Shown here piece after piece: positions 1-20,130 of a stretch of DNA of 20,130 nucleotides. The position numbers and the translations under genes are program-made. The DNA lies in the NCBI GenBank assembly GCA_054661495.1, contig BAAFSQ010000184.1, positions 1 through 20,130 of the forward strand, read 5' to 3'. How positions within the stretch are numbered: position 1 is the first letter of the stretch; each line of letters opens with the position of its first letter. Under the pieces are notes generated by a model. It saw nothing but the letters and a program-made list of their open reading frames with translations. It did no database searches and had not been told where the DNA came from. The DNA is from Zygophlyctis sp. KS116 (taxonomy: Eukaryota; Fungi; Chytridiomycota).

Positions 1-205
1 GGTGGAGGAGGAGCACCCTATTTTGTAAGAAATAATTATAATGCATACCATTCCAGGAGGCGGTGGAGGTGGAGGTGGGGGAACACCCTGTTGGATTATA
101 TATAATTATATGTATACCATTACGGGAGGTGGAGGAGGAGCACCCTATTTTGTAAGAAATAATTATAATGCATACCATTCCAGGAGGCGGTGGAGGTGGA
201 GGTGG
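1..205. repeat. Direct repeat of an exon-intron-exon unit in the formin FH1 region (127-nt period)
   Basis: Positions 1-78 and 128-205 are identical over 78 nt, including a whole 31-nt intron (18-48 = 145-175). Confidence 0.95.
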
Positions 206-2099
206 AGCATCCTATTTTATCAGATATGATTATACTGGATACCATTCCGGGAGGCGGTGGAGGCGGAGGCGGTCCGCTCTATATTTATAAGTTGAACAAC
301 AAATACTATTCCGAGGGGAGGGGGATGTGGCGGGGTTGATTCCTATTGTTAGAGTTACATTCACGGTTTACAAATTCTGATGAGAAATGTGGCGGTGGAA
401 TCTATTGAATTAGAAAGAATAATAAAATAATACATCAGCCATAATTGAGGAAGTCAATTTGTTATTCTAAAGTCAAAAACAATCAAGATACATTTGATGT
501 GGTACTAAGCGATTGATGTGCAATATTACCCTTAAGAATTATTCTAATAAGCAATTACGGTTATCTAACATTTAAACATTGAGTAATTACTAAATGATGC
601 ATGGAAGATGATGCCGTTTCCGGTTTGATGTCCAAAACATCACCATCCGATCGAATATTATCCAACTCTTTTTCAAGTCTTTTATACCGTGTAGTAGCCT
701 TTTTTAATCGTTCTTCAGTATCTTTCAAGCGATCGCCATCATTTGACATTGATGCAATAATTTTTGAAACGTCTATGTTAGCGAGGTCAGCAGCAGGATC
801 TGGATCTTCCGAATCTTTTTGAATCACAATCTGCTGGATGGTTTTATCAATAATAATCATGTATCTTTTAATTCATATGATAATAATAATTACTTCATTC
901 TAGAGAAATTAGCTATAAACTAGTTCACCTGAGAAACGGATTCAGAGGCAAAAATACCAAATGTTTCAATATTGAAGTGAATGGACCATACGATGATGTA
1001 AATCTCGCTGTGAGAGATAATGCTTTGACCATTTCCTCTGGTGTATCTAAGATCAATGAATTTATCCTGGAGTAAATCAATTTTTCATCCTCCTAAAAAT
1101 CATTAATCTTTTGAATACCTCAAATCCCGATATCCAAACATCAATCTGCATCTGCAAAACATCATGATCAATGTCTGATATTTTCTTAAAGTTAAAATGA
1201 AAATCATACGTCAATTAATTCCAATAATCCCAATTGTAAAAATTCGTATCTCATATGCATACGAAATTCAATTTCTTTCCCCGGACCACCATATATTAAA
1301 GAATTTATAAATGCCATGCTAGCAACCTTTCATTTTTAAAAAAGTGAATAAAACCTGTAAATCCTTTTCAATCGGCCCAAATTTAGAGGAACACGATTCC
1401 CATAAACCATAGACAATTATCTCGAATCTAAATCTAGTTTTTGCTTCTTCACTTAGAAATTCCAAAGCTTCTAGTACACTAGAGTGTCCTCCAGGAATCA
1501 TACACATGGCAGCAAATACTTCAAAAACCATGGCTCTAGTACGCATAGATTTAGATTTTAACGACAAGCTGATCACATTGAGTGCGCCAGGAGTATCTAA
1601 AACTGATGATAGTCCAATCTAATTTATCAGTCAAAATCAAAAATGCTCGTCATTCATCAAACAAGAAGCATGCGAGAATTATCAAAATATTCGATAGCGA
1701 TTATTATCATACCTTGTTATTCATTAGAGATCTTAAACATTTAATATATAGTTCTTCAGTCTCCAAGTTGTCAGAATCAGACAGCCCCTTTAAATTCCAT
1801 AAAAGTACTGATAAGCCCTTTGATTGAATGAAATTAGCGATCCAGCGCAATGGCCTCGACCGCAAAAATACAACGAAATCTCCTAATAATGTTTTATCTT
1901 GTGGGTTTTGTAAAAGTTCTGTAATTTCATGCATTTCTTCCTCATGAATAATATAACGTTCTGATAAATGCTGGACGCACATGATCCACTTCCTCTCTGG
2001 TGCTAGATTTCTAAGAACTGCCTTCTTATCATCTGTAAGGTTAAGATCGTCCATTAAGAGCTCTAGAATGTTGACTACATGCTCTGCCTTTGGTAGCAT
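1..2099 (-). CDS. Diaphanous/DAAM-related formin, GBD-FH3-coiled coil-FH1 part; 3' end (FH2) lies beyond the left edge
   Basis: ATG at 2099. GBD-like start ELLMDDLNLTDDKKAVLRNLAPERKW; FH3/DID armadillo motifs IKCLRSLMNNK, ASMAFINSLI, FRMHMRYEF, LKHLVFL..RMKYMIIIDKTIQQIVIQKDSEDPD; then a coiled coil and polyproline exons. Introns (plus coordinates): 1619-1712, 1327-1354, 1185-1209, 1093-1118, 900-928, 865-893, 565-590, 531-558, 467-491, 402-433, 343-371, 279-306, 212-242, 145-175, 88-117, 18-48. The spliced frame is open throughout. Confidence 0.9.
559..564 (-). other. Putative 6-nt phase-0 micro-exon (ATAACC, Ile-Thr) in the formin
   Basis: Flanked by a 26-nt GTAATT..TTAG intron (565-590) and a 28-nt GTAATT..TAAG intron (531-558). 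The alternative is one 60-nt intron, which is atypical for this window. Confidence 0.65.
894..899 (-). other. 6-nt micro-exon (AATGAA) in the formin FH3/dimerisation segment
   Basis: Lies between two 29-nt GT-AG introns (900-928, 865-893). Inclusion gives R-M-K-Y, preserving the R-x-x-Y spacing I recall from Diaphanous formins (..[18 protein letters not shown]..). Confidence 0.75.
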
Positions 2100-2168
2100 T
2101 TAACGCGCGTTAAATTGCGCGTGGCGTTTGAAGCTGATCATTGATTGTTTGTAAATAAAAACATAAGA
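2098..2168. promoter_or_regulatory. Candidate bidirectional promoter between the formin and Pan1/intersectin genes
   Basis: Only 69 nt separate the divergent ATGs (2099 and 2169). Contains a perfect 18-bp palindrome ATTTAACGCGCGTTAAAT (2098-2115) and GTGGCGTTT (2121-2129), a CpG-rich patch in an AT-rich background. Confidence 0.6.
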
Positions 2169-5100
2169 ATGATATTAGCATCTTTAGGTATTCATTTTCA
2201 AATTGATCATAGTTTCTCTATTTTTCCTAGAACCTCCTGATATCGCACAGTATGAATCTCATTATATGCAGTGCAGCCCTAACGCCCAAATGATCATTAG
2301 TGGTAATATAAGAGATTATAACATTTAGTGGAAGCAGCATCTCAAGTTTTTCTTAAATCGGGTCTTCCAAATCAAATTTTGAGTCAAATATGGAGGTTGT
2401 GCCTAGTTTCCTCTACAAATAGTCTAACATTTCCAGAGTTTTGTTTAAATATGTTTCTGATTAAAGCAAAATTAGGAGGGCAGCCCATTCCGAATTCATT
2501 ACCTGAAAATGTTAAAATGGCTGTTTTGAATTCAATTTCTAGTATACAGCGCCATTTATCTGCTCAATCAAATTTTACTGCAATCGGACCATCAACCAAT
2601 TCTTCCATGATTCCTGAAAGAAACTTGGAAATTTCTAGAACGCAAGACAAATCTGCAACTGATAGATCTCATTTTACTGCTAGTGCTAACCAATTTGGTA
2701 TAGAGAGTTCATCAGCCTCTGATAGATCGGGGTGGGCAGTTAATGCAGTTGATAAAGCTAAATACGATACAATATTTAAAGCCTGGGATACTTCTAACAC
2801 TGGTTACATTACGGTATCATTGATCGAATTTAATTCTAGGCTGAACAAGCTCGACAAGTATTTTCACAATCTAGGCTTTCTTCGACGATTCTAAATCATG
2901 TTTGGAAATTATCTGATATGCACAAACTTGGAAAACTTAATATGGATGAATTTGCTGTAGCCATGCATCTAATTTATGCTAAATTAGCTGGGAAAGATCT
3001 ACCTGTCACTCTACCCCAAGAATTAATTCCTCCCTCCACAAGAGATTTAGATGCTCTAGCATCTTTTGTGAAAAAAGATGTAATCGCCAATTTAAGTGTT
3101 CCAAAGAAGCCTCTTGCGAGGGATTACAGCGCAGCTAGTATTGACCTTTCTCCAATCGGAACTGAATTATCACGACCTCCTTTGGATAGTCCTGTTCAGA
3201 TTTTACCAAACTATGAACAAAGAGAAAAGAGAGAGGATCTATTGAAAACAATAGAAACAAAGCGTAAAGAATTATTTGAATTTCGAAGTAAAGTAGACGA
3301 GCAAACCAAATCGTCTAAAAGAATAGAGAATGAAATTTTCGATATAAAGAGGGATATAACTTCTCTTCATAGTCAAACCATTCAATCCTCAAGGATTGTT
3401 GATCAATATAAATCTTCCCTGGAGAAAGCTAGAACAATGATTCTTCAGTCAGGAGGAGCTTCAATACCTCAGTTGATATCTGCTGCCTCTAAACTGGAAA
3501 ATGAACTTTTAGGATCATTACAAAATGCTAAAAATATGATTGAGAGCACAGCAGAGAAAAAAATTGAAGCTGTCAAGCGGAAATATCCTTCTCAAGCATC
3601 AAACAATCTGCCAAGTTTAATATCATCGCCATCAGGGGCTGCTACAGATTCGGTATCATCCAAAGCTGCAGCCTTGCTTGCAGCAAGAATGGCAGCATTA
3701 GGCGTAGGAACCTCCAAAGATAACTCACAAAATGTTGCCCAAATCGAAATAAATAAGATCATGGAAGAGAAGAAGCAGCATATCGATCTATTAAGAGATA
3801 GGGAAGTACGAGTCCATAATATTTTGCAAGAAATTGGAATAATAACGCGAGGAAATAGTCTGCCGCATTATAGTTCTTCAGCAGTTTGGAATCCTAAAGT
3901 TGAAGACCAAATTAAATTCGAAGATGGCATCGGAATTAAGAGCGCTGAGGTTCAGTCACTCGTTGTAGATCTTAAGGATATATCCATGCAAGCAAAAAGA
4001 GGTCCACCTCTGCCTACAATTCCGATCAAACAGTCACACCTTTCACATGTTCATGCCGATATAAATGATAATTTTCTTTTAAATGCTAGCGGCACTTATC
4101 TAGATAATTCAAAGTCATCCTCTTTTTCTACAAATGGAAATGGTTCCAATTCAAAGCCGGCAGGTAAATCTTCTGAAAATACTTTCCAACAAATTGGCTC
4201 CGGGCAGGGCTCCTATTCTCAATATTCAAATGATAGAAAACTATCTGAATTGCCTATTAAAAGTCCCAAATGGGAGGAAAGAAAAGAAAATAATATTCCC
4301 TCTTCCACAACCCACGGAATAACTACTGATTCTATGGAGACATTTAAGTCTAGAGCCTCTTTCGAAACGAAACACTCTGCAGTTTTGCAAAGGGCACAAG
4401 AGGCAATTAAATTTGCCCAAGAAAGCACCGCAAGGAGATCGTTTATGGACTCCCCTAGCTCAGCTACTGGCGCCAACAATACCTTCACCCCTCAAACAGC
4501 TGAAAATACGACATATTTGGGTCTTAAAAAGGATAATTATACTAAACAAAATCATCCCACGAACGATGATCAAAAAGAGCCTTTTGGGCAGGAATTAACG
4601 CCTCTTAGCCCTAATAATCTTTCATCTGATTTCGCTTCTGATGGATCACTTGGTAGTAAGCAAAAAAATGTTGAGCGGATACAACCAAAAGGCTTTGATC
4701 ATAATGAAATAAAAACATCATCGAATGTTAACAATGGTTTCGATATTTCAAAAGAAGAAAACACCGAAAAATCTTTGTTTTCAGCGGGCACATTTGTGGA
4801 AAATTCTCAAAATATTTCCCAGTCGCAGAAAACTTCTTCCCAGTTAAGTCATCCAAATGCTGATGATGATTCGAGACGATATAATAATCTGAAGATTAAT
4901 TCTTCCCATTTATCACAAATTGCCGTGGTACAGCCAGATTTCTTAAGAGAAAATGATATTTCTTCGACTGTATTAGTAACTAAATAATCATATAGGGGAC
5001 CTCACTAATATCTGATGCAAAGCCTGACGAACGGAACACTTTATTGGCTTCGATCCGAAATTTTGGACCGAGATCTTTGCAAAAGGTCACTGAAGTGAAA

Positions 5101-8100
5101 GAGCAAAGCACGAGGCAGATATCAGTTACTTTATCTCCATCTTCAAATGTAGGTTATTTATAATTCAACTTTAGGGAACTACTAATGCCCCATTGATTTT
5201 GCCGAAAATTGTACTAATCGTTATCAGTACTAAAGTTTAGAGTACTCCACCCCCTTCACCTCCGAAATTAAGCATGGTGAATTCTTCCTCTGTGTCAAAA
5301 ATGGTATCAAATTTATGAATATTAATCTAAGAACTCACCACCTCCGCCTCCACCGCCTCTAGCTTCAATTCCAAAAAATGGAAACATTCCGGTTCGTTTA
5401 TTTATTTGATTTTTCTAGTTTTCGCTTGCAAAAGATTCACGCAGTGACTTACTGACTTCAATACGAAATTCAGGCGTCGACTCTTTGAAGAAAACAAAAA
5501 TTAACATGAAAGAGGAGATGGATGTATATTCTTGAATGCTAAAATGTAGGAAATCCCAAATAATATAGATGGTGCAAAATCTTCTCGTGAAGAAACAGAA
5601 CAAACAGCGATTCTGTTAAAGGTATGATGATACTTGTACTGATGGCAGACACAAGTTCCACCTCCTCCACCACCACCGAATGTCGGTGTTCCACCTCCCC
5701 CGCCACCGCCAAACATGAAAAGCATATTTACCATCCAGAATATAACAAGTGGTGGAAATATGGTAACACTTGAAGCCCCAGTCCCCCCGCCGCCACCATT
5801 CAATCTTGCCGTTCCATCTACCCTTCAGAAAGGAAAGGCCTCTAATACTGTTTCTAATGTAACTTTTTTCAACTTATATTTTAGAATTCCGTTAGCAAAG
5901 ATTCACATAGCGATCTTTTGGCTGCGATTCGTAATTCTGGCCTAGGTTCTCTTAAGAAAACTCAGACAGATATAAATTTAGAAGCGAACGTATGAATTTT
6001 AATACTTATATATAAAGGGGTCTGCAAATTCGGTCAAACGTTGCAATACTGCGCCAAAACCCTCTGCAGATCGCAAGATTGATTTGATGGATTCTATTCG
6101 TAATTCGGGTGTGTCATCTTTACGAAAAACACCTAAATTAAGTCCCAAAAAAGAAAATACAGGCTCACTTCCATTTAAAACACTGTCAGATTTGAAAAAT
6201 CAAGCAGGAAAGGGTACTAAAAATGAAACTAATGTCCGTCCACCTGATTTGGCAGATGATTTGAAGTTTGCATTGAAATCTTTTCGGAACAAAGTTTCTG
6301 GAAATTCGAATCCAGATGTAGATAAGGATGATGAAGATTCTGCATGGTCAAATTCTGGGAGCTCAATAGACAAAGCTTCTAACGACAATTTTGCTCTTAA
6401 AACGACTAAAACTTCTCTGGCACTGGTCTCAGAAGCTCCCAGAAACGAGATTTCCAGCCATAAACCCGAGACGTTTATATTTGCTCCAGAATCTAAAACA
6501 TTTAATTCTGCCGCATCAAGAGACTCGGATAAAAATAATATTATTGTGGATGAATCTCGTAAGAGTTTTAACACCACAAACATTTCTGGATTCAATCCTA
6601 CTGATTTTCAACGAAAATCCTTAAATATTGAAAATAACCCCCAAAAAGAAACTGCATTGTTTACAAGAATACCAGAAGGATCAGAAAATACTAATCCATT
6701 CATGCGAAAGTCTCAGATTAAACCAACTCATGATCCGTTGGGCACAGAAAATGTTATTTCTCTGGCGGATCCTGCACAAGCAAATAAACAATCATCTCCT
6801 CAACAGATTGATGTTCTTAATCCCTTTGGTTCGCCTACTAAAAATACAGAATCATACGATGCGAAATCAACACATGAATCGTCTCAAAACTTGGCCGATA
6901 TTGTTTCCGAGATGGAAAGTGAGTCAAAAAATGTGTCTGAAGTGCAAAATATCTTCTCTAAGTATGAAGTGGCGGCGCTGTATGATTTCAATGGGGTGCG
7001 AAGCGATGATCTGAGTTTCAATTTAGGGGATATACTCATAGTTTTACAGGAACATGGAGAATGGCTATACGGCACATCTTGCCGAAATTCCTTATCCGGA
7101 TGGTTTCCCAAGAATTATACGGAAGTGCGAATGGCGGATAGTGTGCAGATAAAAGGTAAACTGTCTGTACTAAGTTTAGATGATTACAGAGTTCTTTTTA
7201 ATTTCGAGGCAGAAAATTCAAATGAATTAACTATAAAATCAGGGGAAATTGTATCGATTGTAAAAAGCATTAATGAAAACTGGGTGATAATTAAAAACCA
7301 AAGAGGAGACAGTGGACTTGTACCATGCAATTATATTTCAAAGTTCAATGATCAGGAATCACATGCGGAGTTTACCGCTCATGATTCAATTCCTAATTCT
7401 GCAAGTTCTTCAACGTATCAAGATTCCAAGGTATATCATCTGACAAATCATCTAAAATTAAAGATTCTTGATACTAACGATTCTCCCAAAATGCTCTCCG
7501 GTATTCCAACAAAGCTTAGAACTGCTCTAGATATGGCTTATAGAAGTGAAAGTAATGATAATCTAGCCATATCAGATTTCGTTGTTACAGAATTTTCCAC
7601 AGAAGAAGATCGCAAGAGATATGAAGCAGTTCGTGAAATTCTTAATACCGAGCAAAAGTATAGTGATGACCTGAATGTGATTATTGAGGTAGCTCATTGA
7701 CTTTGTAAATCGTAGAATTTTCTCAAGCCTGTTTTGGCCAAAAAATACATGTCAAAGTCTGATATAAAAATAATATTTTCCAATATTCAAGAAATAGCAC
7801 AAGTGACTTCTACGATACTTAAAAGTTTTGAAGCTGCTCGTACTCCTATAGGTCTAAATCCTAATATCGGAGTACTTTTCATTCAGCATGTAAGTGAATT
7901 CTTTATGATGATTAGGTTCCATCGCTGGATATTTATAATTCTTATTGTTCCAACCTTATGACAGCGACAAAATATTTGATCGATAAGCTTCAAAAAGACG
8001 ATCGTTTGAACAGTTTCATCCTTGTAATTTTAAATCACTAATTTGCAGAAAAAACAAAAGAGCCCCAAATGCAAGAATTTAGATTTATCTTCGTACTTAC

Positions 8101-9213
8101 TAAAGCCCATGCAGCGCATTACCAGATATAGTCTACTATTTAAGCAAGTATTACACTATACTCCTAAAGACCATATTGAACATGCAGATATCTTGGCTGC
8201 TGTTGAAGCAAGTGAGAGGGTAGCACGTTCAGTCAATCAAGCCACAAAGGAGAGTGAAAGTCGACAAAAAATAGAAGAAATATCTGCAGTTGTAGATTTG
8301 GTATTACCTAATGAAAATATTGCTTTGGATCTATCAGCTCCAACTAGACTTTTAGGAAATCGCATATATTTACATGAAGGGCCATTAGCTAAAAACAAGA
8401 GCGGCAGAAAGATATATTGCTACTTATTCAATGATTTGGTTCTTTTGGTTGAGCCAAAAAACAAGGCTAGTAATATAATTTCAACAAAGGCTGTACAGTA
8501 TGAAATGTATGAAACGGTAATTTTTCTATAAAAAATTAAAAAACAGCCAATCCCAGTTAATGAAGTAATTATAAGAGAAGTCCCTAGGAATTTTGGAAAA
8601 GACGTTGGTACAATTGATGACTGCAGTTTTCAAATTGTTCATACGGATAAAATCATTACACTCCGTGCACCCACACCTTCTGATAAGCGACAATGGATGA
8701 AAATTGTAGAAACTGCAATTGCAGACGCAGAGAAAAAACTTTCCAAATCTCTTAGCGACAGTAAATTACAAAAAGAATCAAATCTTTCCATGATTGGAAC
8801 CTTGGAAGTAAAACTCTTGGAGATTAAAAAATTAGCTAGTGCTGATCGAATAAGTAATTATTTCAATTTAAATTTTTTAGAACTTAAACCTGGATTATTC
8901 TGCATATTTAATCTTGACGCACAATCTATTCGATCTAAAACTTGCCAATCATGGCCTCCTAAATGGGGACAAAATCTAATATTTTCAATATTCTCATTAG
9001 ACTCTACATTAAAAATCTCATTATATAATTACGATCGGTTCTCCAAGGATGGTAATTCCCGTTTACTAAAAGAATTTAGAATATATTGGCGAGACAAGTA
9101 TCCAATTAGATTTTTTAGAGTACTATGGTACAAAATCCACAGAGCCAATGACTCTTCAGCTGAATGAAGAGAGCGGTTCAATCATTTTACAATTGGCATT
9201 TCGGGGACTTTAG
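2169..9213 (+). CDS. PAN1: Pan1/intersectin-like endocytic scaffold, ~2167 aa: EH, EH, coiled coil, proline-rich with 4 WH2, central+acidic motif, 2 SH3, DH (RhoGEF), PH, C2
   Basis: EH1 KSGLPNQILSQIW..LTFPEFCLNM; EH2 DKAKYDTIF..GKLNMDEFAVAMHLIYAKL..LPQELIPPSTR (Pan1-type); AAALLAARMAALG; SH3 ALYDF..GWFPKNY and VLFNFEAENSNEL..GLVPCNY; DH EILNTEQKY..YLLKPMQRITRYSLL; PH YLFNDLVLL..KRQWM; C2 IGTLEVKLLE..PKWGQ..YDRFSKDEYIG. 20 introns: 2188-2212, 2303-2328, 2814-2839, 4970-4995, 5149-5174, 5211-5240, 5304-5331, 5392-5418, 5524-5549, 5622-5648, 5859-5884, 5990-6017, 7156-7179, 7431-7463, 7689-7715, 7890-7915, 8024-8048, 8517-8546, 8854-8880, 9052-9079. Spliced length is 6504 nt, ending at TAG 9211-9213. 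Confidence 0.85.
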
Positions 9214-10033: not shown

Positions 10034-10090
10034 GTCTTTGCCCTACTTTGATTTTGTCAAATTCATAGTAGGGTTTAACGCCACTAAAAA

Positions 10091-10427
10091 ATGACAAAAA
10101 CTGGAATCGCAAAAGGATTAAACAAGGGACATGTCACTAACAAAAGAACTCTTGCTCCAAAACCAGTCTCTAAAAAAGGAGTAGAAACTAAAAGATCAAA
10201 GTTTGTTAAAAGTTTGATTAGAGAAGTTGTTGGATTTGCACCTTATGAAAAGAGAATTTTAGAATTACTAAAAAATTCAAAAGATAAGAGAGCAAAGAGA
10301 CTAGCAAAGAAGAAGGTTTTTTTAAAATTTGACTAAATTAAAGTTGGGAACTTTTGGAAGAGGAAAGCGAAAGGTTGATGAATTGAGTAATGTGATGGCA
10401 GAGTCTAGAAGAGCAGCTGCTCATTAA
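10091..10427 (+). CDS. RPL36: 60S ribosomal protein L36 (eL36), 102 aa
   Basis: [43 protein letters not shown] | [14 protein letters not shown]. One 28-nt intron 10316-10343; stop TAA 10425-10427. Confidence 0.97.
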
Positions 10428-14834: not shown

Positions 14835-15008
14835 TTGATTTTTTCAAGTCTGTGTCAAGGATGTGGCCAAAGTTACCATTACTTGAAGCAGTTGAATTTT
14901 TTTTGGATCTCAATGAATTATTTTTCATGTTTGCACTCGTGTGCCTAAAATAGCAAACTGGCCGCTGTTTTGTGGCGTTATAGCTCTTTAATTAGAATAA
15001 TCTCCACA

Positions 15009-15635
15009 ATGTCAGGAGAAGGATATATCTATAATATAATTTCAAAGATTCAGAGTGCCTGGGCCCCTGAGAATGCAGATCTTTCATCTAAAACTGATAC
15101 TAATTCTGATGCTGGAAAGAAGGATGTTGATATTTCCCCAAAGGATCATAGCTCTAAAGTGTCGCTGGAATCAGAAACTTCCAAAAATGATGAGACATTT
15201 TCTCAGAAAGTGACAAATATCTTTAGCGGATACTATAATTACTATAAATCGAATGATGAGCTCAAATCTGCAAGTGTCAGTTCAGCAGATAATACCTCTT
15301 ACATGAGGAATACTACAGAAAATCAAACTAATCAAAAGGATCTAGCAAATGTCTCAAACATTTTAGGAAATTATTTATTCTCAAAAAAAAAAGAGCCAAG
15401 TAATGATCGGACAGTTCCTAATGACTTACTAGCTGAAATTAAAAACGCTGGAGGTGTGACTAAATTAAACAAAGTTATTCATGTTAAAGAAGAAAAAAGA
15501 ACAGATCATGATCTCACAGCGGTTTTATCATCTGCACTTAATGCTAGAAAGAATGCGATGATTATGGATCCCGAAGGTAATTAACAATAATTTTAAACCA
15601 AAGATGACGATAATTCTGAATGGGATGATAATTAG
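15009..15635 (+). CDS. Small WH2-central-acidic (WCA) protein, putative Arp2/3 nucleation-promoting factor, 199 aa
   Basis: ATG 15009. WH2 NDLLAEIKNAGGVTKLNKV; central helix DLTAVLSSALNARKNAM. Removing the 27-nt intron 15577-15603 adds the acidic tail DPEDDDNSEWDDN* (TAG 15633-15635). Confidence 0.8.
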
Positions 15636-15737: not shown

Positions 15738-18241
15738 ATGCATGGTCTAAATAGACAACCCCCGTCAGCTCCACTACCTCCTTCTCCTGCAAATGGGGCA
15801 TCAATGCCTGATGTGCCAAACTGGAACTCGCATCAGGTATGTGAATGGCTAGAAAAAAGTAACTTTGGTCAATTTGTGGAGCTTTTCTTAGCTCATGATA
15901 TTACAGGCGATGTATTGATTGACTTGAATTATTCATTGCTAAAAGAGATCGGAGTCACTCTAGTAGGCGATCGAGCAAGAATCTTAGCAGCTATTAAAAG
16001 GAATTTGAAATCAGGGAATACTTCAATAGTCACTGACACATACAGTCTTGGGCCTTTAAGTCCTAAATTGGAAGAAAGAAGACCACCGCAAATGAGTTCT
16101 CCTGAACGACCTCAAAAGAACCGTTTCCCTGGCATGAGTCCCGGTTCACCAGATGCACCGGAATCCGATCATATTGGAGTCACAAGAATGGATAGTAGAA
16201 CCCATGCCTCTCCAACTATTTTTATGGGAGATGGAATATCTCCTACCGGCGGAAAATCCTCGCCTATGGTGAAAAATAGAAATAATATGTATCCAAGTTT
16301 AGCTCCACGTTCTTCATCAATTAAAGAATCAAAGCAATCACCATCATCGGCTAAATCTGATTCAGGTGACATTCATTCAGTCAGATATGTAAGTATTTTT
16401 TCAAAATTAATTTCGATTGCGTATTCTGATTTTTAGAAGATGGCAAGAGTGCAAGGAGTAAATGGACAATGGAATACTGCTAATCTCTCAGGAATAGCTG
16501 ATGGAGCAGCTATAAGAGAGCGAATATTTAGGTCTTTTGCCATTGATAGCTCGGGAATGGTTGATTTTGTTTTGCTCCGAAAAGAGATCACTAGCGAAGG
16601 AAGTGGTATATTTACAATTCTTAATAATTTGCTAGTTTTATCCGAGCCTAGTGATTCTGAATTAAGCCGAATAGTAAGCAAAAGCAATTACAGTGATATC
16701 CAGCTTCAATTTTTGATCAAAAGAAAAGCAGATTATAATGATGGATCATTCAGTCCTAAGAATTTAGCGGGGACAGAAGGTAAATTTACAGCTTATAATT
16801 ATTAGATGTAAAAAAGAACTCGGATAGGAAATTACAGAAGTTACTGGGAGAAAATGCCTATGGCGAACCTAAACAAATCCGGTATTCAAACAAGAGAATG
16901 ACAGATCATTCATATGCTGGTGATAAAAGATCCATTATGTCAGCAAGATCATCAAAGCTTAGTAGATTTTTTGGTGATAGACCTCCGGACGATATGATCA
17001 TGGATCAACTCGAGGAGTTTTTCCCAGGATGTATTGATGGTGAAACTGAAGAAAGGAAATCTATCATCAGAGATAAAGTACAAAGTGCAATATTATCCAA
17101 AAGAATGTCTAGAGCTTCAGTTCGACAGTCAACCATGGCTGCGCGAGTTAGTAGAATTGTTCCTCATAGGCCAGAGTCACGAGATAGCCGAAAATCTTCA
17201 ATTGATAGAATAACTCCAAACCTATATGGATCTATATCTTTGGCAGATCTTAAAGATAGATTTGAGAAGGAAACGCCACCAGAGCCATCTTCACAAGGTC
17301 CACCAAGATGGCAAAAGGGCTCTCTAATTGGTCAAGGAGGATTTGGAAAGGTTTATCATGCGTTAAACATTGAGACGGGTGAAATTATGGCAGTAAAACA
17401 AGTTTTATTGGGCCCTGAAAGTAAATCCCGTAATAAGAAAGAAGAAGCTTTGCAGAGAGAAATAGATTTACTGAAGGATCTAGATCATGAGCATATCGTA
17501 CGATATCTAGGATCTGAATCAACGGAAACATCTTTCAATGTATTTTTAGAGTACGTTTCTGGTGGATCAATTTCCAGTTGTCTCCAAAAAAATGGAAAAT
17601 TCGAAGAAGAACTAGCCCAGACATTGGCTTGCCAAATATTGTATGGATTAGAATATTTGCACGAACAGAATATTATTCATCGTGACATTAAGGGTGCAAA
17701 TGGTAAATTTCATTTTAATTAATCAACAGTATTGATTGATGCTGATGGTATCGCTAAAATATCCGATTTTGGAATTTCCAAAAAGAATGATTATCAAATG
17801 GCATATCAAAGAGTTACACGGCTTTCAATGCAGGGCTCTGTCAATTGGATGGCTGTAGAGGTAGTAAAAGGAAAAGGTTATAGTGCTAAAGTCGATATAT
17901 GGAGCTTGGGATGTCTGGTTTTGGAAATGTTGACAGGAAATGCCCCCTGGCACGGAGTCCAAGGAAGTATAATTTATCTTTTGGGGACTGGAAACCCCCC
18001 TCCTGTTCCTGAATGGCTTTCTCCTCTATCCAAAGCTTTTATTTCCAAGTGTTTTACCATTGATCCTGAAAAACGTCCTACCGCAACGGCGCTTTTATCT
18101 GAACCGTGGACATTAGTTGATCCTTATTCATATGATTTTTCGAAATGGATGAATGAAACGTCAACTAAAGAGGGTGACGAGATTGAGTCTGATGATGGTT
18201 CATATTATGATGACGTTCTAAAAACAAGCTCAACAGACTAA
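15738..18241 (+). CDS. STE11: Ste11-like MAP kinase kinase kinase with SAM domain, ~790 aa
   Basis: SAM WNSHQVCEWL..HDITGDVLIDL..LKEIGV..VGDRARIL; ubiquitin/RA-like segment; FFGDRPP..LEEFFP motif; kinase LIGQGGFGKVY, MAVKQV, HRDIKGAN, DFG, VDIWSLGC. Introns 16389-16436, 16606-16635, 16780-16805, 17703-17729. Confidence 0.88.
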
Positions 18242-19644: not shown

Positions 19645-20130
19645 TTAATCGTCCCAATCCTCGGAATCCTCATCGGAATCTATGAATTAAAGACGCGATC
19701 AAATACCTGATTCTCCCACAGCACCTTTTCGTCGATTTAATGCAGCCTTTAATGCAGCTGCTAAATCATCTCCAGTTTCTTCTACTGGTTCTGGGGATAC
19801 TTCTTGCGGACGTTCATTCTGGGGTTTCTTCAAAGAAGTAAGACCGGCATTTCTGATTGAAGACAAGAGATCATTGCGGCCATCGGGAGCCGGGGCCGCT
19901 TTAACTCGAGCAGGAGGAGGTACCTAATAGTTTCTTAACTTAAAATACTTACTGATTGTGAAGATGGTGGAGGAATTCCCTATACTATAAAATTTCTAGG
20001 ATCTTACCTGACGTGGCATTGCAGGTGGAGGAGGACCGCCCTATTATTTAAATATTTCTAAGATAGACTTACCATTCCTGGCATTGGAGGTGGAGGAGGA
20101 CCGCCCTATTATTTAAATATTTCTAAGATA
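19645..20130 (-). CDS. 3' end of a WASP/Las17-like nucleation-promoting factor (proline-rich, WH2, central, acidic); absent from the ORF track
   Basis: Exons 20073-20105 (GGPPPPPMPGM), 20008-20040 (GGPPPPAMPRQ), 19953-19979 (GIPPPSSQS), 19707-19923 (..DGRNDLLSSIRNAGLTSLKKP..DDLAAALKAALNRRKGAVGES) and 19645-19679 (DSDEDSEDWDD*). The N-terminus is outside the window, so the subfamily is inferred from the C region. Confidence 0.85.
20023..20130. repeat. Tandem exon+intron duplication (65-nt period) in the WASP-like proline-rich region
   Basis: 20023-20065 and 20088-20130 are identical over 43 nt, spanning exon and intron sequence. Confidence 0.92.

What the first reader, a model, noticed from the sequence alone, without database searches (positions are those of the whole stretch)
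4996..6347. Pan1/intersectin carrying its own internal 4xWH2 + central + acidic actin-nucleation module
Seen after manual splicing (most of it is missing from the ORF track): four WH2 motifs, DERNTLLASIRNFGPRSLQKV (5026-5088), DSRSDLLTSIRNSGVDSLKKT (5434-5496), DSHSDLLAAIRNSGLGSLKKT (5900-5962) and DRKIDLMDSIRNSGVSSLRKT (6069-6131). They are interleaved with polyproline tracts and followed by a C-like helix DLADDLKFALKSFRNKV (6246-6296) and acidic DVDKDDEDSAW (6315-6347). These closely resemble the WH2 and C of the WASP-like gene in this window. Established: WCA activates Arp2/3 and is usually C-terminal; tandem WH2 arrays (Spire, Cobl, JMY) can nucleate actin alone; animal intersectin-L recruits N-WASP in trans. 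Inference: one polypeptide may combine endocytic adaptor, Rho/Cdc42 GEF, Arp2/3 activator and tandem-WH2 nucleator.
Basis: partly seen in the sequence, partly recalled or inferred. Interest (0 to 1): 0.8.

Follow-up and report, generated by a model that had tools for sequence, protein, structure and literature searches.

The report
Chytrid intersectin/Pan1 with four WH2 motifs
A chytrid fungus's version of the endocytosis scaffold intersectin/Pan1 carries, in its middle, four actin-binding WH2 motifs followed by a WASP-like "central + acidic" element; single WH2 and acidic motifs are already known in this protein family, so this is an expanded and more WASP-like variant, not a new kind of protein.

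Summary
All four WH2-like motifs, the polyproline tracts, the C-like helix and the acidic-Trp patch lie at the stated coordinates. They join in frame through nine phase-0 GT-AG introns of 26-30 nt, the normal intron size in this genome; 0 of 300 shuffles allow such a chain.

WH2-4, C and A share one uninterrupted exon with both SH3 domains, so the module is internal to one EH-EH-...-SH3-SH3-DH-PH-C2 gene.

The nearest relatives are chytrid proteins named "Intersectin 1/2" or "PAN1". This backbone is documented (Dergai 2016), as are a central WH2 in Cryptococcus Cin1 and Pan1 = fungal intersectin.

I found three things not described in the papers I could search:
- A C-helix plus acidic-Trp element is conserved in orthologues from Batrachochytrium, Chytridiales, Synchytrium and sanchytrids.
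- Zoosporic lineages have the order polyPro-(WH2)-C-A, whereas Mucoromycota and Dikarya have A-polyPro-WH2.
- This lineage has four WH2 motifs; no orthologue examined has more than one.

A complex model places WH2-3 in actin's barbed-end cleft (score 0.90, best control 0.02). Arp2/3 activation and WH2-only nucleation are untested, and no RNA data could be obtained.

The scan had already noted this gene on this same window (s1-558350), not on other DNA.

Verdict: a new variant of a known kind, of moderate interest.

The parts
2188..2813 (+). First EH domain, in two exons (about 2188-2299 and 2329-2813, separated by a 29-nt intron). The start codon was not determined.
   Evidence: Pfam EH 39.4 bits on 2322-2891; own-genome EH scan; exon chain.
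2840..4969 (+). Long exon holding the second EH domain (about 2840-3049), a charged region taken to be a coiled coil, and a Ser/Thr-rich spacer. It ends in phase 0 at the GT at 4970.
   Evidence: Pfam EH 53.1 bits; chain. The coiled coil is inferred from composition and orthologues; no coiled-coil predictor was run.
4996..5148 (+). Exon with WH2-1 (5026-5088). The intron before it is 4970-4995 (26 nt); an in-frame alternative acceptor lies at 5022/5023.
   Evidence: Pfam WH2 19.2 bits, below the cut-off.
5175..5210 (+). Putative 36-nt micro-exon (GTTNAPLILPKI) flanked by 26-nt and 30-nt introns. The alternative is a single 92-nt intron, 5149-5240.
   Evidence: Inferred only from the genome's intron size; no reads.
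5241..5391 (+). Two proline-rich exons, 5241-5303 (PPPSPP) and 5332-5391 (P7), separated by a 28-nt intron.
5419..5523 (+). 105-nt exon with WH2-2 (5434-5496).
   Evidence: Pfam WH2 21.5 bits.
5550..5858 (+). Spacer exon 5550-5621 and polyproline exon 5649-5858 (P7, P7, P5).
5885..5989 (+). 105-nt exon with WH2-3 (5900-5962). It has the same length and register as the WH2-2 exon.
   Evidence: Pfam WH2 27.3 bits, above the cut-off. Complex model with actin: score 0.90, best control 0.02.
6069..6131 (+). WH2-4, in the large exon that starts at 6018.
   Evidence: No Pfam hit; 52% identity to the WASP-like WH2, E 1e-6; aligned without gaps in A2.
6246..6296 (+). C-like amphipathic helix DLADDLKFALKSFRNKV.
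   Evidence: Aligns with the C of two C-terminal WCA genes in this window and with orthologues. Fits most of the published C rule (PMC3298513). No hit to solved C-A sequences.
6315..6347 (+). Acidic patch with Trp (DVDKDDEDSAW; Trp at 6345-6347).
6693..6827 (+). Two NPF tripeptides (6693-6701, 6819-6827) in the linker before the SH3 domains; possible EH-domain ligands.
   Evidence: The ligand role is inferred from established knowledge of EH domains.
6975..7340 (+). Two SH3 domains (about 6975-7124 and 7185-7340), in the same exon as WH2-4, C and A.
   Evidence: Pfam SH3_1 79.2 bits, two stretches.
7629..9164 (+). DH (RhoGEF), PH and C2 domains across four exons with introns of 25-39 nt. The open frame ends at 9164.
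   Evidence: Pfam RhoGEF, PH_13 and C2; chain; best relatives.

Best explanation
This is the chytrid orthologue of intersectin / Pan1 / Cin1, about 2,170 residues long. Its layout is EH-EH-coiled coil-[WH2-1, polyPro, WH2-2, polyPro, WH2-3, WH2-4, C, A]-NPF linker-SH3-SH3-DH-PH-C2.

The middle section most likely works as a built-in class-I nucleation-promoting module of the N-WASP type (proline-rich region, two adjacent WH2, C, A), preceded by two further WH2/polyproline units:
- The WH2 helices bind actin monomers in the barbed-end cleft.
- The polyproline tracts recruit profilin-actin and SH3 proteins.
- The C helix and acidic Trp contact Arp2/3.

The protein would then start branched actin at endocytic sites itself. 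It would also scaffold WASP through its SH3 domains and load a Cdc42-type GTPase through DH-PH.

Shown here: the motifs, their in-frame exon chain, the domain set, orthology, conservation of C-A in zoosporic fungi, and a passing WH2-3/actin model.

Inferred: Arp2/3 binding and activation, profilin recruitment, GEF specificity, endocytic location, and inclusion of every exon in the mRNA.
For: Gene and exons:
- A single open spliced frame runs 2188-9160 with 15 introns of 25-40 nt.
- The module is crossed by nine phase-0 introns of 26-30 nt, against 0 of 300 shuffles.
- Tiny introns are verified in RPL36, a kinase and actin.

Selection: many synonymous differences between the WH2 copies.

WH2 identity:
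- The A2 profile hits N-WASP (E 3.3e-15), Cobl (3.1e-12), WASP, WAVE2, MIM, WIP and VopL; the top 19 hits are all WH2 proteins.
- The complex model of WH2-3 with a chytrid actin and ATP scores 0.90 in three runs, best of 3 controls 0.02. That mark was reached by 51 of 78 solved complexes and 2 of 108 mismatched pairs.
- The runs share at least 88% of contacts and partner pLDDT is at least 70. The interface covers actin 143-148, 167-168, 341-355 and 21-28.

C-A:
- It aligns with the C of the two C-terminal WCA genes in this window.
- It aligns with helix + acidic-Trp elements at the same place in orthologues from Batrachochytrium, Phlyctochytrium (two species), Chytriomyces, Irineochytrium, Synchytrium, Sanchytrium and Amoeboradix.
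- It has the L-x3-L-x3-L core and terminal V of the published C rule (PMC3298513).

Family precedent: Cin1 has a central WH2 and acts upstream of Wsp1 and Cdc42 (PMC3645719, PMC7324655). From my own knowledge, yeast Pan1's WH2-like plus acidic region activates Arp2/3 in vitro (Duncan et al. 2001); that paper was not held in the library.
Against: - No transcript evidence was available.
- Three of the four WH2 copies do not reach Pfam's cut-off.
- The C-A profile finds no solved WASP-family C-A.
- The basic residues after the C helix (K, R, K) are not the contiguous doublet of the published rule.
- The module is internal, not C-terminal.
- Several chytrid orthologues have C-A without any detectable WH2, in protein or in six-frame DNA. 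C-A may therefore serve a role that does not need WH2.
- The complex pass may reflect memory of solved WH2-actin structures, as the tool itself warns.
Confidence: 0.6

Rival explanations
1. The WH2 array, with or without C-A, mainly nucleates or elongates filaments without Arp2/3. It would act like Spire, Cobl or JMY, or like the WH2 + polyproline monomer-delivery activity of WASP-family proteins.
For: - There are four WH2 copies interleaved with five polyproline tracts.
- The window's WH2 style, with its longer helix-to-LKK linker, aligns well with Cobl WH2s.
- WH2-3 models onto actin.
Against: In the spliced model the WH2-to-WH2 linkers are about 78, 108 and 26 residues (coordinates). From my own knowledge of Spire and Cobl, known tandem nucleators depend on short, defined linkers. 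Only WH2-3/WH2-4 are N-WASP-like in spacing. A conserved C-A directly follows the array.
Confidence: 0.15
2. The WH2 and proline tracts only tether actin and SH3/profilin partners to the coat. The helix + acidic-Trp element is not an Arp2/3 activator but a ligand for another partner, or an intramolecular regulator of the SH3/DH region.
For: - The C-A profile has no match to solved C-A sequences.
- C-A occurs without WH2 in Batrachochytrium, Chytriomyces and others.
- The basic doublet of the C rule is imperfect.
- Cin1 mutants lacking the SH3 and GEF domains had no phenotype (PMC3645719), which shows that parts of these proteins can be dispensable.
Against: The order WH2-WH2-C-A and the spacing match the two canonical C-terminal WCA genes of the same genome. 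The hydrophobic L-x3-L-x3-L core and the Trp are conserved across distant orthologues.
Confidence: 0.2
3. The exons are alternative cassettes. The main isoform carries fewer WH2 copies, or a short EH-EH-coiled-coil isoform ends at the stop inside the retained 4970-4995 intron.
For: Every exon in the module is a multiple of 3 nt with phase-0 borders, so any of them can be skipped in frame. A TAA lies just after 4969 if the first intron is retained. Cin1 has short and long isoforms by alternative splicing (PMC3645719).
Against: All four copies are kept under amino-acid constraint. WH2-4, C and A cannot be skipped without also losing the SH3 exon.
Confidence: 0.15

Closest known systems
Cryptococcus neoformans Cin1 (fungal intersectin; Shen et al. 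2010, as summarised in PMC3645719 and PMC7324655)
   Same: EH, coiled coil, a central actin-binding WH2, two SH3 domains and DH-PH in one polypeptide. It acts with WASP (Wsp1) and Cdc42. The basidiomycete relatives seen here (Trametes, Mycena) match the window's DH-PH exon.
   Different: - Cin1 has one EH, one WH2 and no C2.
- In the basidiomycete and Mucoromycota orthologues examined, the acidic Trp lies about 100 residues before the polyproline and the single WH2, and I saw no C-like helix in the two sequences inspected by eye, Trametes and Haplosporangium.
- The window has two EH, four WH2, the order WH2-C-A, and C2.
Chytrid, sanchytrid and other early-fungal intersectin/PAN1 orthologues (Batrachochytrium, Gaertneriomyces, Synchytrium, Phlyctochytrium, Chytriomyces, Clydaea, Sanchytrium; 'primeval' ITSN of PMC4824007)
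   Same: - EH x2, SH3 x2, DH-PH and often C2.
- 45-59% identity in DH-PH.
- Polyproline followed by a C-like helix and acidic Trp before the SH3 domains.
- Sanchytrids, Clydaea and Lobulomyces also have one WH2 before it.
   Different: None has more than one WH2, either in the predicted protein (150 best relatives plus the cluster members fetched up to that point) or in six-frame scans of six fetched loci, one of which (Borealophlyctis) is cut off upstream of the module. The window has four.
N-WASP and other WASP-family VCA regions
   Same: Proline-rich region, two adjacent WH2, C helix and acidic Trp in that order. The WH2 profile matches N-WASP chains solved with actin. The C aligns with the window's own WASP-like gene.
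   Different: - The module is internal, not C-terminal.
- There is no WH1 or CRIB.
- Two extra WH2/polyproline units lie upstream.
- The C-A profile does not reach solved WASP-family sequences.
Saccharomyces cerevisiae Pan1
   Same: EH-EH-coiled-coil endocytic coat protein with an acidic motif and a WH2-like motif. It is regarded as the fungal intersectin (bioRxiv 10.1101/2024.03.28.587219).
   Different: Ascomycete Pan1 has lost SH3 and RhoGEF (same preprint). From my own knowledge, its acidic motif precedes a single WH2-like motif and it has no C helix.
Tandem-WH2 nucleators (Spire, Cobl, JMY)
   Same: Three or four WH2 motifs in one chain. JMY also has C-A. Cobl WH2s are among the best profile matches.
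   Different: The linkers here are long and proline-rich, apart from the last pair. No KIND, Cobl or JMY-specific domains are present. Nucleation without Arp2/3 is untested.

Membership tests
WH2 motif (Pfam PF02205) | Score at or above Pfam's gathering cut-off (23.1 bits) | tested here: inconclusive
   WH2-3 scores 27.3 (passes). WH2-2 scores 21.5 and WH2-1 19.2 (just below). WH2-4 has no hit.
WH2 motif (Pfam PF02205) | N-terminal helix with L-L/M-x-x-I, followed by an L-K/R-K-T/V motif | tested here: met
   All four copies have it. I14 and L22 are invariant and L10/L11 are conserved in at least 90% of alignment A2. The profile hits only WH2 proteins at the top of the PDB list.
WH2 motif (Pfam PF02205) | Binds the cleft between actin subdomains 1 and 3 | tested here: met
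   Model only, for WH2-3. Score 0.90, best control 0.02; the mark was reached by 51 of 78 solved complexes and 2 of 108 mismatched pairs. Contacts cover actin 143-148, 167-168 and 341-355. The pass may reflect memory of solved WH2-actin complexes. No binding was measured.
WASP-type WCA (class I nucleation-promoting factor) | Order WH2, then C, then acidic region with Trp | tested here: met
   WH2-4 at 6069-6131, C at 6246-6296, A at 6315-6347.
WASP-type WCA (class I nucleation-promoting factor) | C domain: three V/I/L/M residues spaced by three, then an R/K doublet or triplet, then V/I/L/M/Y (PMC3298513) | tested here: inconclusive
   L-x3-L-x3-L and the terminal V are present. The basics are K, R, K, not contiguous. 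Sanchytrid and Phlyctochytrium orthologues have RR/RRR. The C-A profile finds no solved WASP-family chain.
WASP-type WCA (class I nucleation-promoting factor) | Located at the C-terminus of the protein | tested here: not met
   About 940 coding residues (NPF linker, SH3 x2, DH, PH, C2) follow it, and the SH3 domains continue in the same open exon.
WASP-type WCA (class I nucleation-promoting factor) | Stimulates Arp2/3 nucleation | not testable with these tools
   Needs biochemistry.
Intersectin / Pan1 / Cin1 orthogroup | Two N-terminal EH domains, then a coiled coil | tested here: met
   EH scores 39.4 and 53.1 bits. The coiled coil is inferred and was not run through a predictor.
Intersectin / Pan1 / Cin1 orthogroup | SH3 domains followed by DH-PH(-C2) | tested here: met
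   SH3_1 79.2 bits (two stretches); RhoGEF 68.3 and 28.8; PH_13 47.2 and 31.5; C2 30.0.
Intersectin / Pan1 / Cin1 orthogroup | The best relatives are members of the family | tested here: met
   Top hits among 1.84 billion representatives are chytrid proteins named Intersectin 1/2 or PAN1, at 45-59% identity.
Tandem-WH2 nucleators (Spire/Cobl/JMY) | Three or more WH2 joined by short linkers that set nucleus geometry | tested here: not met
   There are four WH2, but the linkers are about 78, 108 and 26 residues. Only the last pair is close.

The most novel reading that the evidence does not exclude
The ancestral fungal intersectin/Pan1 was itself a canonical WASP-type activator with polyPro-WH2-C-A in that order. 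Yeast Pan1's odd acidic-then-WH2 layout would then be a derived remnant, and animal intersectin's reliance on N-WASP in trans a later loss. In this chytrid lineage the module was amplified by duplication of phase-0 WH2 exons into a four-WH2 machine. One polypeptide could then recruit cargo adaptors, load Cdc42, bind WASP and nucleate branched actin on its own.
Probability: 0.3. Interest if true: 0.65.

Novelty: new variant of a known kind. Interest (0 to 1): 0.45.

Why it matters
Intersectin in animals and Pan1 in yeast are central organisers of endocytic actin, but they look different. Animal intersectin borrows N-WASP, while yeast Pan1 has a weak, oddly ordered activator region.

The published account places the gain of WH2 in an "advanced fungal group" (PMC4824007). 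Here, zoosporic fungi carry WH2 and/or a WASP-like C-A in canonical order inside the full-length intersectin, and one lineage has four WH2 copies.

If the C-A is active, the actin-nucleating role of this family is older and more WASP-like than described. That would give a concrete route from a self-sufficient ancestor to the two modern arrangements.

It also offers a natural series of zero, one and four WH2 copies on the same scaffold for testing how WH2 number tunes Arp2/3-dependent assembly.

The practical limit is that everything beyond sequence and one structural model still needs biochemistry and transcripts.

Tried and rejected
- **Pfam on WH2-4.** Scanned alone and in a 116-residue context: no hit even at E 10.
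- **Single-sequence PDB searches.** The WH2-3 exon gave only chance hits to cytochrome c'. The WH2-4/C/A piece gave nothing.
- **C-A profile (A1) against PDB.** Only chance hits at E above 0.2 and no WASP-family chain, so sequence search does not establish the C-A as WASP-type.
- **Metagenome contig scan with the large exon.** 104 pattern matches, none confirmed. No close relatives exist for a between-species selection test.
- **Batrachochytrium isoform P0006.** Not on record for DNA; I used P0153 instead.
- **Borealophlyctis locus.** It starts at the contig end, so its upstream module could not be read.
- **Two-gene reading rejected.** WH2-4, C, A and the SH3 domains share one exon without a stop, and full-length single-gene orthologues exist.
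- **Chance or artefact rejected.**
- **Split actin rejected.** I considered sending this genome's actin as separate exon chains to the complex tool. I used a full-length chytrid actin from a word search instead.
- **Joined model.** Exons were searched one by one by reference, and the only joined step was a local in-frame path check that printed exon by exon.

Full report
**1. What is in the sequence**

The window has 36% G+C and is contig C184 of a 12.7 Mb genome in 1,175 contigs.

- WH2-1, 5026-5088
- WH2-2, 5434-5496
- WH2-3, 5900-5962
- WH2-4, 6069-6131
- the helix DLADDLKFALKSFRNKV, 6246-6296
- DVDKDDEDSAW, 6315-6347

Five proline runs lie between the WH2 copies.

**2. Are these exons of one gene?**

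The case therefore rests on sequence.

- *Splice chain.* The short open pieces are joined by nine GT-AG introns of 26-30 nt, all in phase 0.
- *Intron size is normal for this genome.* Conserved proteins give the same size:
  - RPL36 has a 28-nt intron.
  - A kinase's HRDIKGAN|VLID motif is split by 27 nt.
  - The conventional actin gene has introns of 27, 25 and 25 nt.
  - Earlier notes of this scan on other pieces of the genome say the same.
- *Whole-gene path.* A shortest-path search finds one open spliced frame from 2188 to 9160 with 15 introns of 25-40 nt, about 2,170 codons.
- *Shuffle control.* The stretch 4970-6017 can be crossed with nine introns of 25-30 nt. None of 300 shuffles allows any such path, and 12 of 300 do with 22-40 nt.
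- *Composition.* Exons have 41.5% G+C and introns 23.8%.
- *Selection.* The WH2 copies keep their residues through different codons. WH2-2 and WH2-3 share 16 of 21 residues, 9 of them with different codons. These are old copies held by selection on the protein.
- *One exon.* WH2-4, C, A, two NPF motifs, both SH3 domains and the start of the DH domain lie in one exon without a stop. The internal position of at least WH2-4/C/A therefore does not depend on any splice model.

Two details stay open. The first acceptor may be 4995 or 5022; both are in frame. The 36-nt micro-exon 5175-5210 is inferred only from intron size.

Exons were searched one at a time by reference.

**3. What the gene is**

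Pfam finds EH twice, SH3 twice, RhoGEF, PH and C2.

I searched the DH-PH exon against 1.84 billion representatives. The best hits, at 45-59% identity, are chytrid proteins that their depositors call "Intersectin 1", "Intersectin-2" or "Actin cytoskeleton-regulatory complex protein PAN1". They come from Borealophlyctis, Batrachochytrium, Gaertneriomyces, Synchytrium, Nowakowskiella, Phlyctochytrium, Chytriomyces and Clydaea. Further down come sanchytrids, Mucoromycota and basidiomycetes. Five of them have the same Pfam layout.

No hit exceeds 59%, and the metagenome scan found nothing. No close relative is therefore available.

The genome also has a separate three-EH gene on contig C21, probably Eps15/Ede1-like, and three single-EH loci.

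**4. What is already known**

- Dergai et al. 2016 (PMC4824007) describe EH-EH-CC-SH3-SH3-DH-PH-C2 as the primeval intersectin of "primitive fungi" and Fonticula. They place the gain of WH2 in an "advanced fungal group".
- Cryptococcus Cin1 is described with EH, coiled coil, a central actin-binding WH2, two SH3 domains and DH-PH. It works with Wsp1 and Cdc42 (PMC3645719; PMC7324655).
- A 2024 preprint treats Pan1 as the fungal intersectin. It notes that Ustilago keeps SH3 and RhoGEF whereas ascomycetes lost them.

The backbone, and the idea of a WH2 inside a fungal intersectin, are therefore not new.

**5. What the orthologues show**

A WH2 model built from the window and from orthologue motifs finds at most one WH2 in any of the 150 best relatives or the cluster members fetched by then.

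Six-frame scans of six orthologous loci give the following:

| Locus | WH2 found |
|---|---|
| Clydaea | one |
| Lobulomyces | one |
| Gaertneriomyces | none |
| Nowakowskiella | none |
| Batrachochytrium | none |
| Borealophlyctis (partial locus) | none |

An amphipathic helix followed by an acidic stretch ending in Trp sits after the polyproline and before the SH3 domains in Batrachochytrium, two Phlyctochytrium species, Chytriomyces, Irineochytrium, Synchytrium, Sanchytrium and Amoeboradix. In the two sanchytrids a WH2 precedes it.

In Mucoromycota and basidiomycetes the order differs: acidic Trp, then polyproline, then one WH2. I saw no helix before the acidic patch in the two I inspected by eye, Trametes and Haplosporangium.

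I found neither the conserved C-A nor this difference in order in the papers I could search. Subscription papers, including Shen 2010, were not held.

**6. Are the motifs what they look like?**

*WH2.*
- One copy passes Pfam's cut-off, two fall just short and one is missed.
- A profile of the window's copies plus orthologue WH2s (A2) hits chains solved with actin: N-WASP (E 3.3e-15), Cobl (3.1e-12), WASP, WAVE2, MIM, WIP and VopL. The top 19 hits are all WH2 proteins.
- I modelled the WH2-3 exon with a chytrid actin (P0243) and ATP. The score was 0.90 in all three runs, against 0.02 for the best of three controls.
- That mark was reached by 51 of 78 solved complexes and 2 of 108 mismatched pairs. 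The runs agree in at least 88% of contacts and partner pLDDT is at least 70.
- The contacts are actin 143-148, 167-168, 341-355 and 21-28, which is the canonical WH2 site.
- As the tool warns, solved WH2-actin complexes exist, so this shows likeness, not measured binding.

*C and A.*
- The helix has the L-x3-L-x3-L core and terminal hydrophobic residue of the published C-domain rule. Its basic residues are not a contiguous doublet (PMC3298513).
- It aligns without gaps to the C of two genes in this same window that end in canonical WCA. One is the WASP-like gene, which ends ...GES/DSDEDSEDWDD* at 19645. The other is a small protein that ends ...MDPE/DDDNSEWDDN* at 15635. The alignment is A3.
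- A profile of the C-A region finds no solved WASP-family chain. C-A identity therefore rests on pattern, order and conservation.

**7. Mechanism**

The last part of the module (polyproline, WH2-3, a 26-residue linker, WH2-4, a 38-residue linker, C, then the acidic Trp 16 residues after the helix) is laid out like the C-terminal half of N-WASP. Upstream are two further WH2 units separated by proline-rich linkers of about 78 and 108 residues.

The most likely reading (0.6) is a built-in Arp2/3 activator on the intersectin scaffold. Extra WH2/polyproline units would feed monomers.

The alternatives are:
- Arp2/3-independent nucleation or elongation (0.15). The long linkers weaken this reading.
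- Tethering only, with a non-Arp2/3 role for the helix/acidic element (0.2). This fits the orthologues that have C-A but no WH2.
- Cassette splicing that lowers the WH2 number (0.15; not exclusive). All exons are in-frame cassettes, and retention of the first intron would give a short isoform, as reported for Cin1.

The two WH2 exons of 105 nt each (5419-5523 and 5885-5989) align end to end. This points to growth of the array by exon duplication.

**8. Verdict**

It overstates novelty, because the family, its backbone and an internal WH2 are known, and C-A is shared by other zoosporic fungi. The tandem-nucleator idea is also overstated.

What remains new is the four-copy WH2 array, the canonical WH2-C-A order inside early-fungal intersectins, and the contrast with the A-polyPro-WH2 order of later fungi. 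This is a new variant of a known kind, with interest about 0.45.

Noticed in passing
window 14949-15635 (+): A small gene ends in a canonical WCA: WH2 VPNDLLAEIKNAGGVTKLNKV (from 15414), C DLTAVLSSALNARKNAMI, a 27-nt intron at 15577-15603, then a last exon DDDNSEWDDN* ending at 15635. No other domain was seen upstream. It matches the scan's note s1-558295.
   Followed up: partly
window 19645-20130 (-): This is the 3' end of a WASP-like gene: polyproline, WH2 DGRNDLLSSIRNAGLTSLKKP, C DDLAAALKAALNRRKGAV, a 27-nt intron at 19680-19706, and a last exon (D)SDEDSEDWDD* at 19645-19679. The 20-kb window therefore holds three WCA-bearing genes and a formin.
   Followed up: partly
window 1-2100 (-): A formin-like gene with repeated PPPPPPPPGM tracts in short open pieces (about 2-342) and a longer N-terminal exon (1710-2099). 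It is transcribed divergently from the intersectin gene. It matches the scan's note s1-558310.
   Followed up: no
G000:C971:313-384 (-) and G000:C12:28668-28739 (+); loci L010 and L009: These are the only other recognisable WH2 motifs in the genome. C971 is a 1.4-kb contig with polyproline followed by SRGQLLDSIRNSGMKSLKKT, the same 'SIRNSG..SLKK' style as the intersectin and WASP-like copies. C12 has an N-terminal NALLKAIQKGARLKKA followed by a long proline-rich region, which looks verprolin/WIP-like.
   Followed up: partly
orthologues P0047, P0056, P0057, P0070, P0076, P0077, P0080, P0082, P0089, P0139 versus P0006, P0010, P0013, P0014, P0027, P0030, P0040, P0050: Mucoromycota and basidiomycete intersectins have the acidic Trp about 100 residues before the polyproline and a single WH2. 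Chytrid and sanchytrid ones have polyproline, an optional WH2, a C-like helix, then the acidic Trp. Synchytrium has two helix/acidic-Trp elements, and a 'KMKxLQGA...DW' variant sits just before the first SH3 in Nowakowskiella, Clydaea and Gaertneriomyces.
   Followed up: partly
G000:C70 (locus L007, minus strand, 1287-2440 and upstream): The conventional actin gene is split by three introns of 27, 25 and 25 nt. Two of them split a codon (Trp86 and an Arg near residue 312). By chance, reading through the intron's first G gives the same amino acid in both cases.
   Followed up: yes
window 4970-6017: Every exon of the module is a multiple of 3 nt and every intron is in phase 0. Proline/WH2 arrays in this genome may grow by tandem duplication of exons.
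   Followed up: partly
window 10088-10424 (+) and 16799-18238 (+): These are a ribosomal protein L36 gene with a 28-nt intron and a MAPKKK-like kinase gene with a 27-nt intron inside the HRDIKGAN/VLID motif. Both were used here only as controls for intron size.
   Followed up: yes
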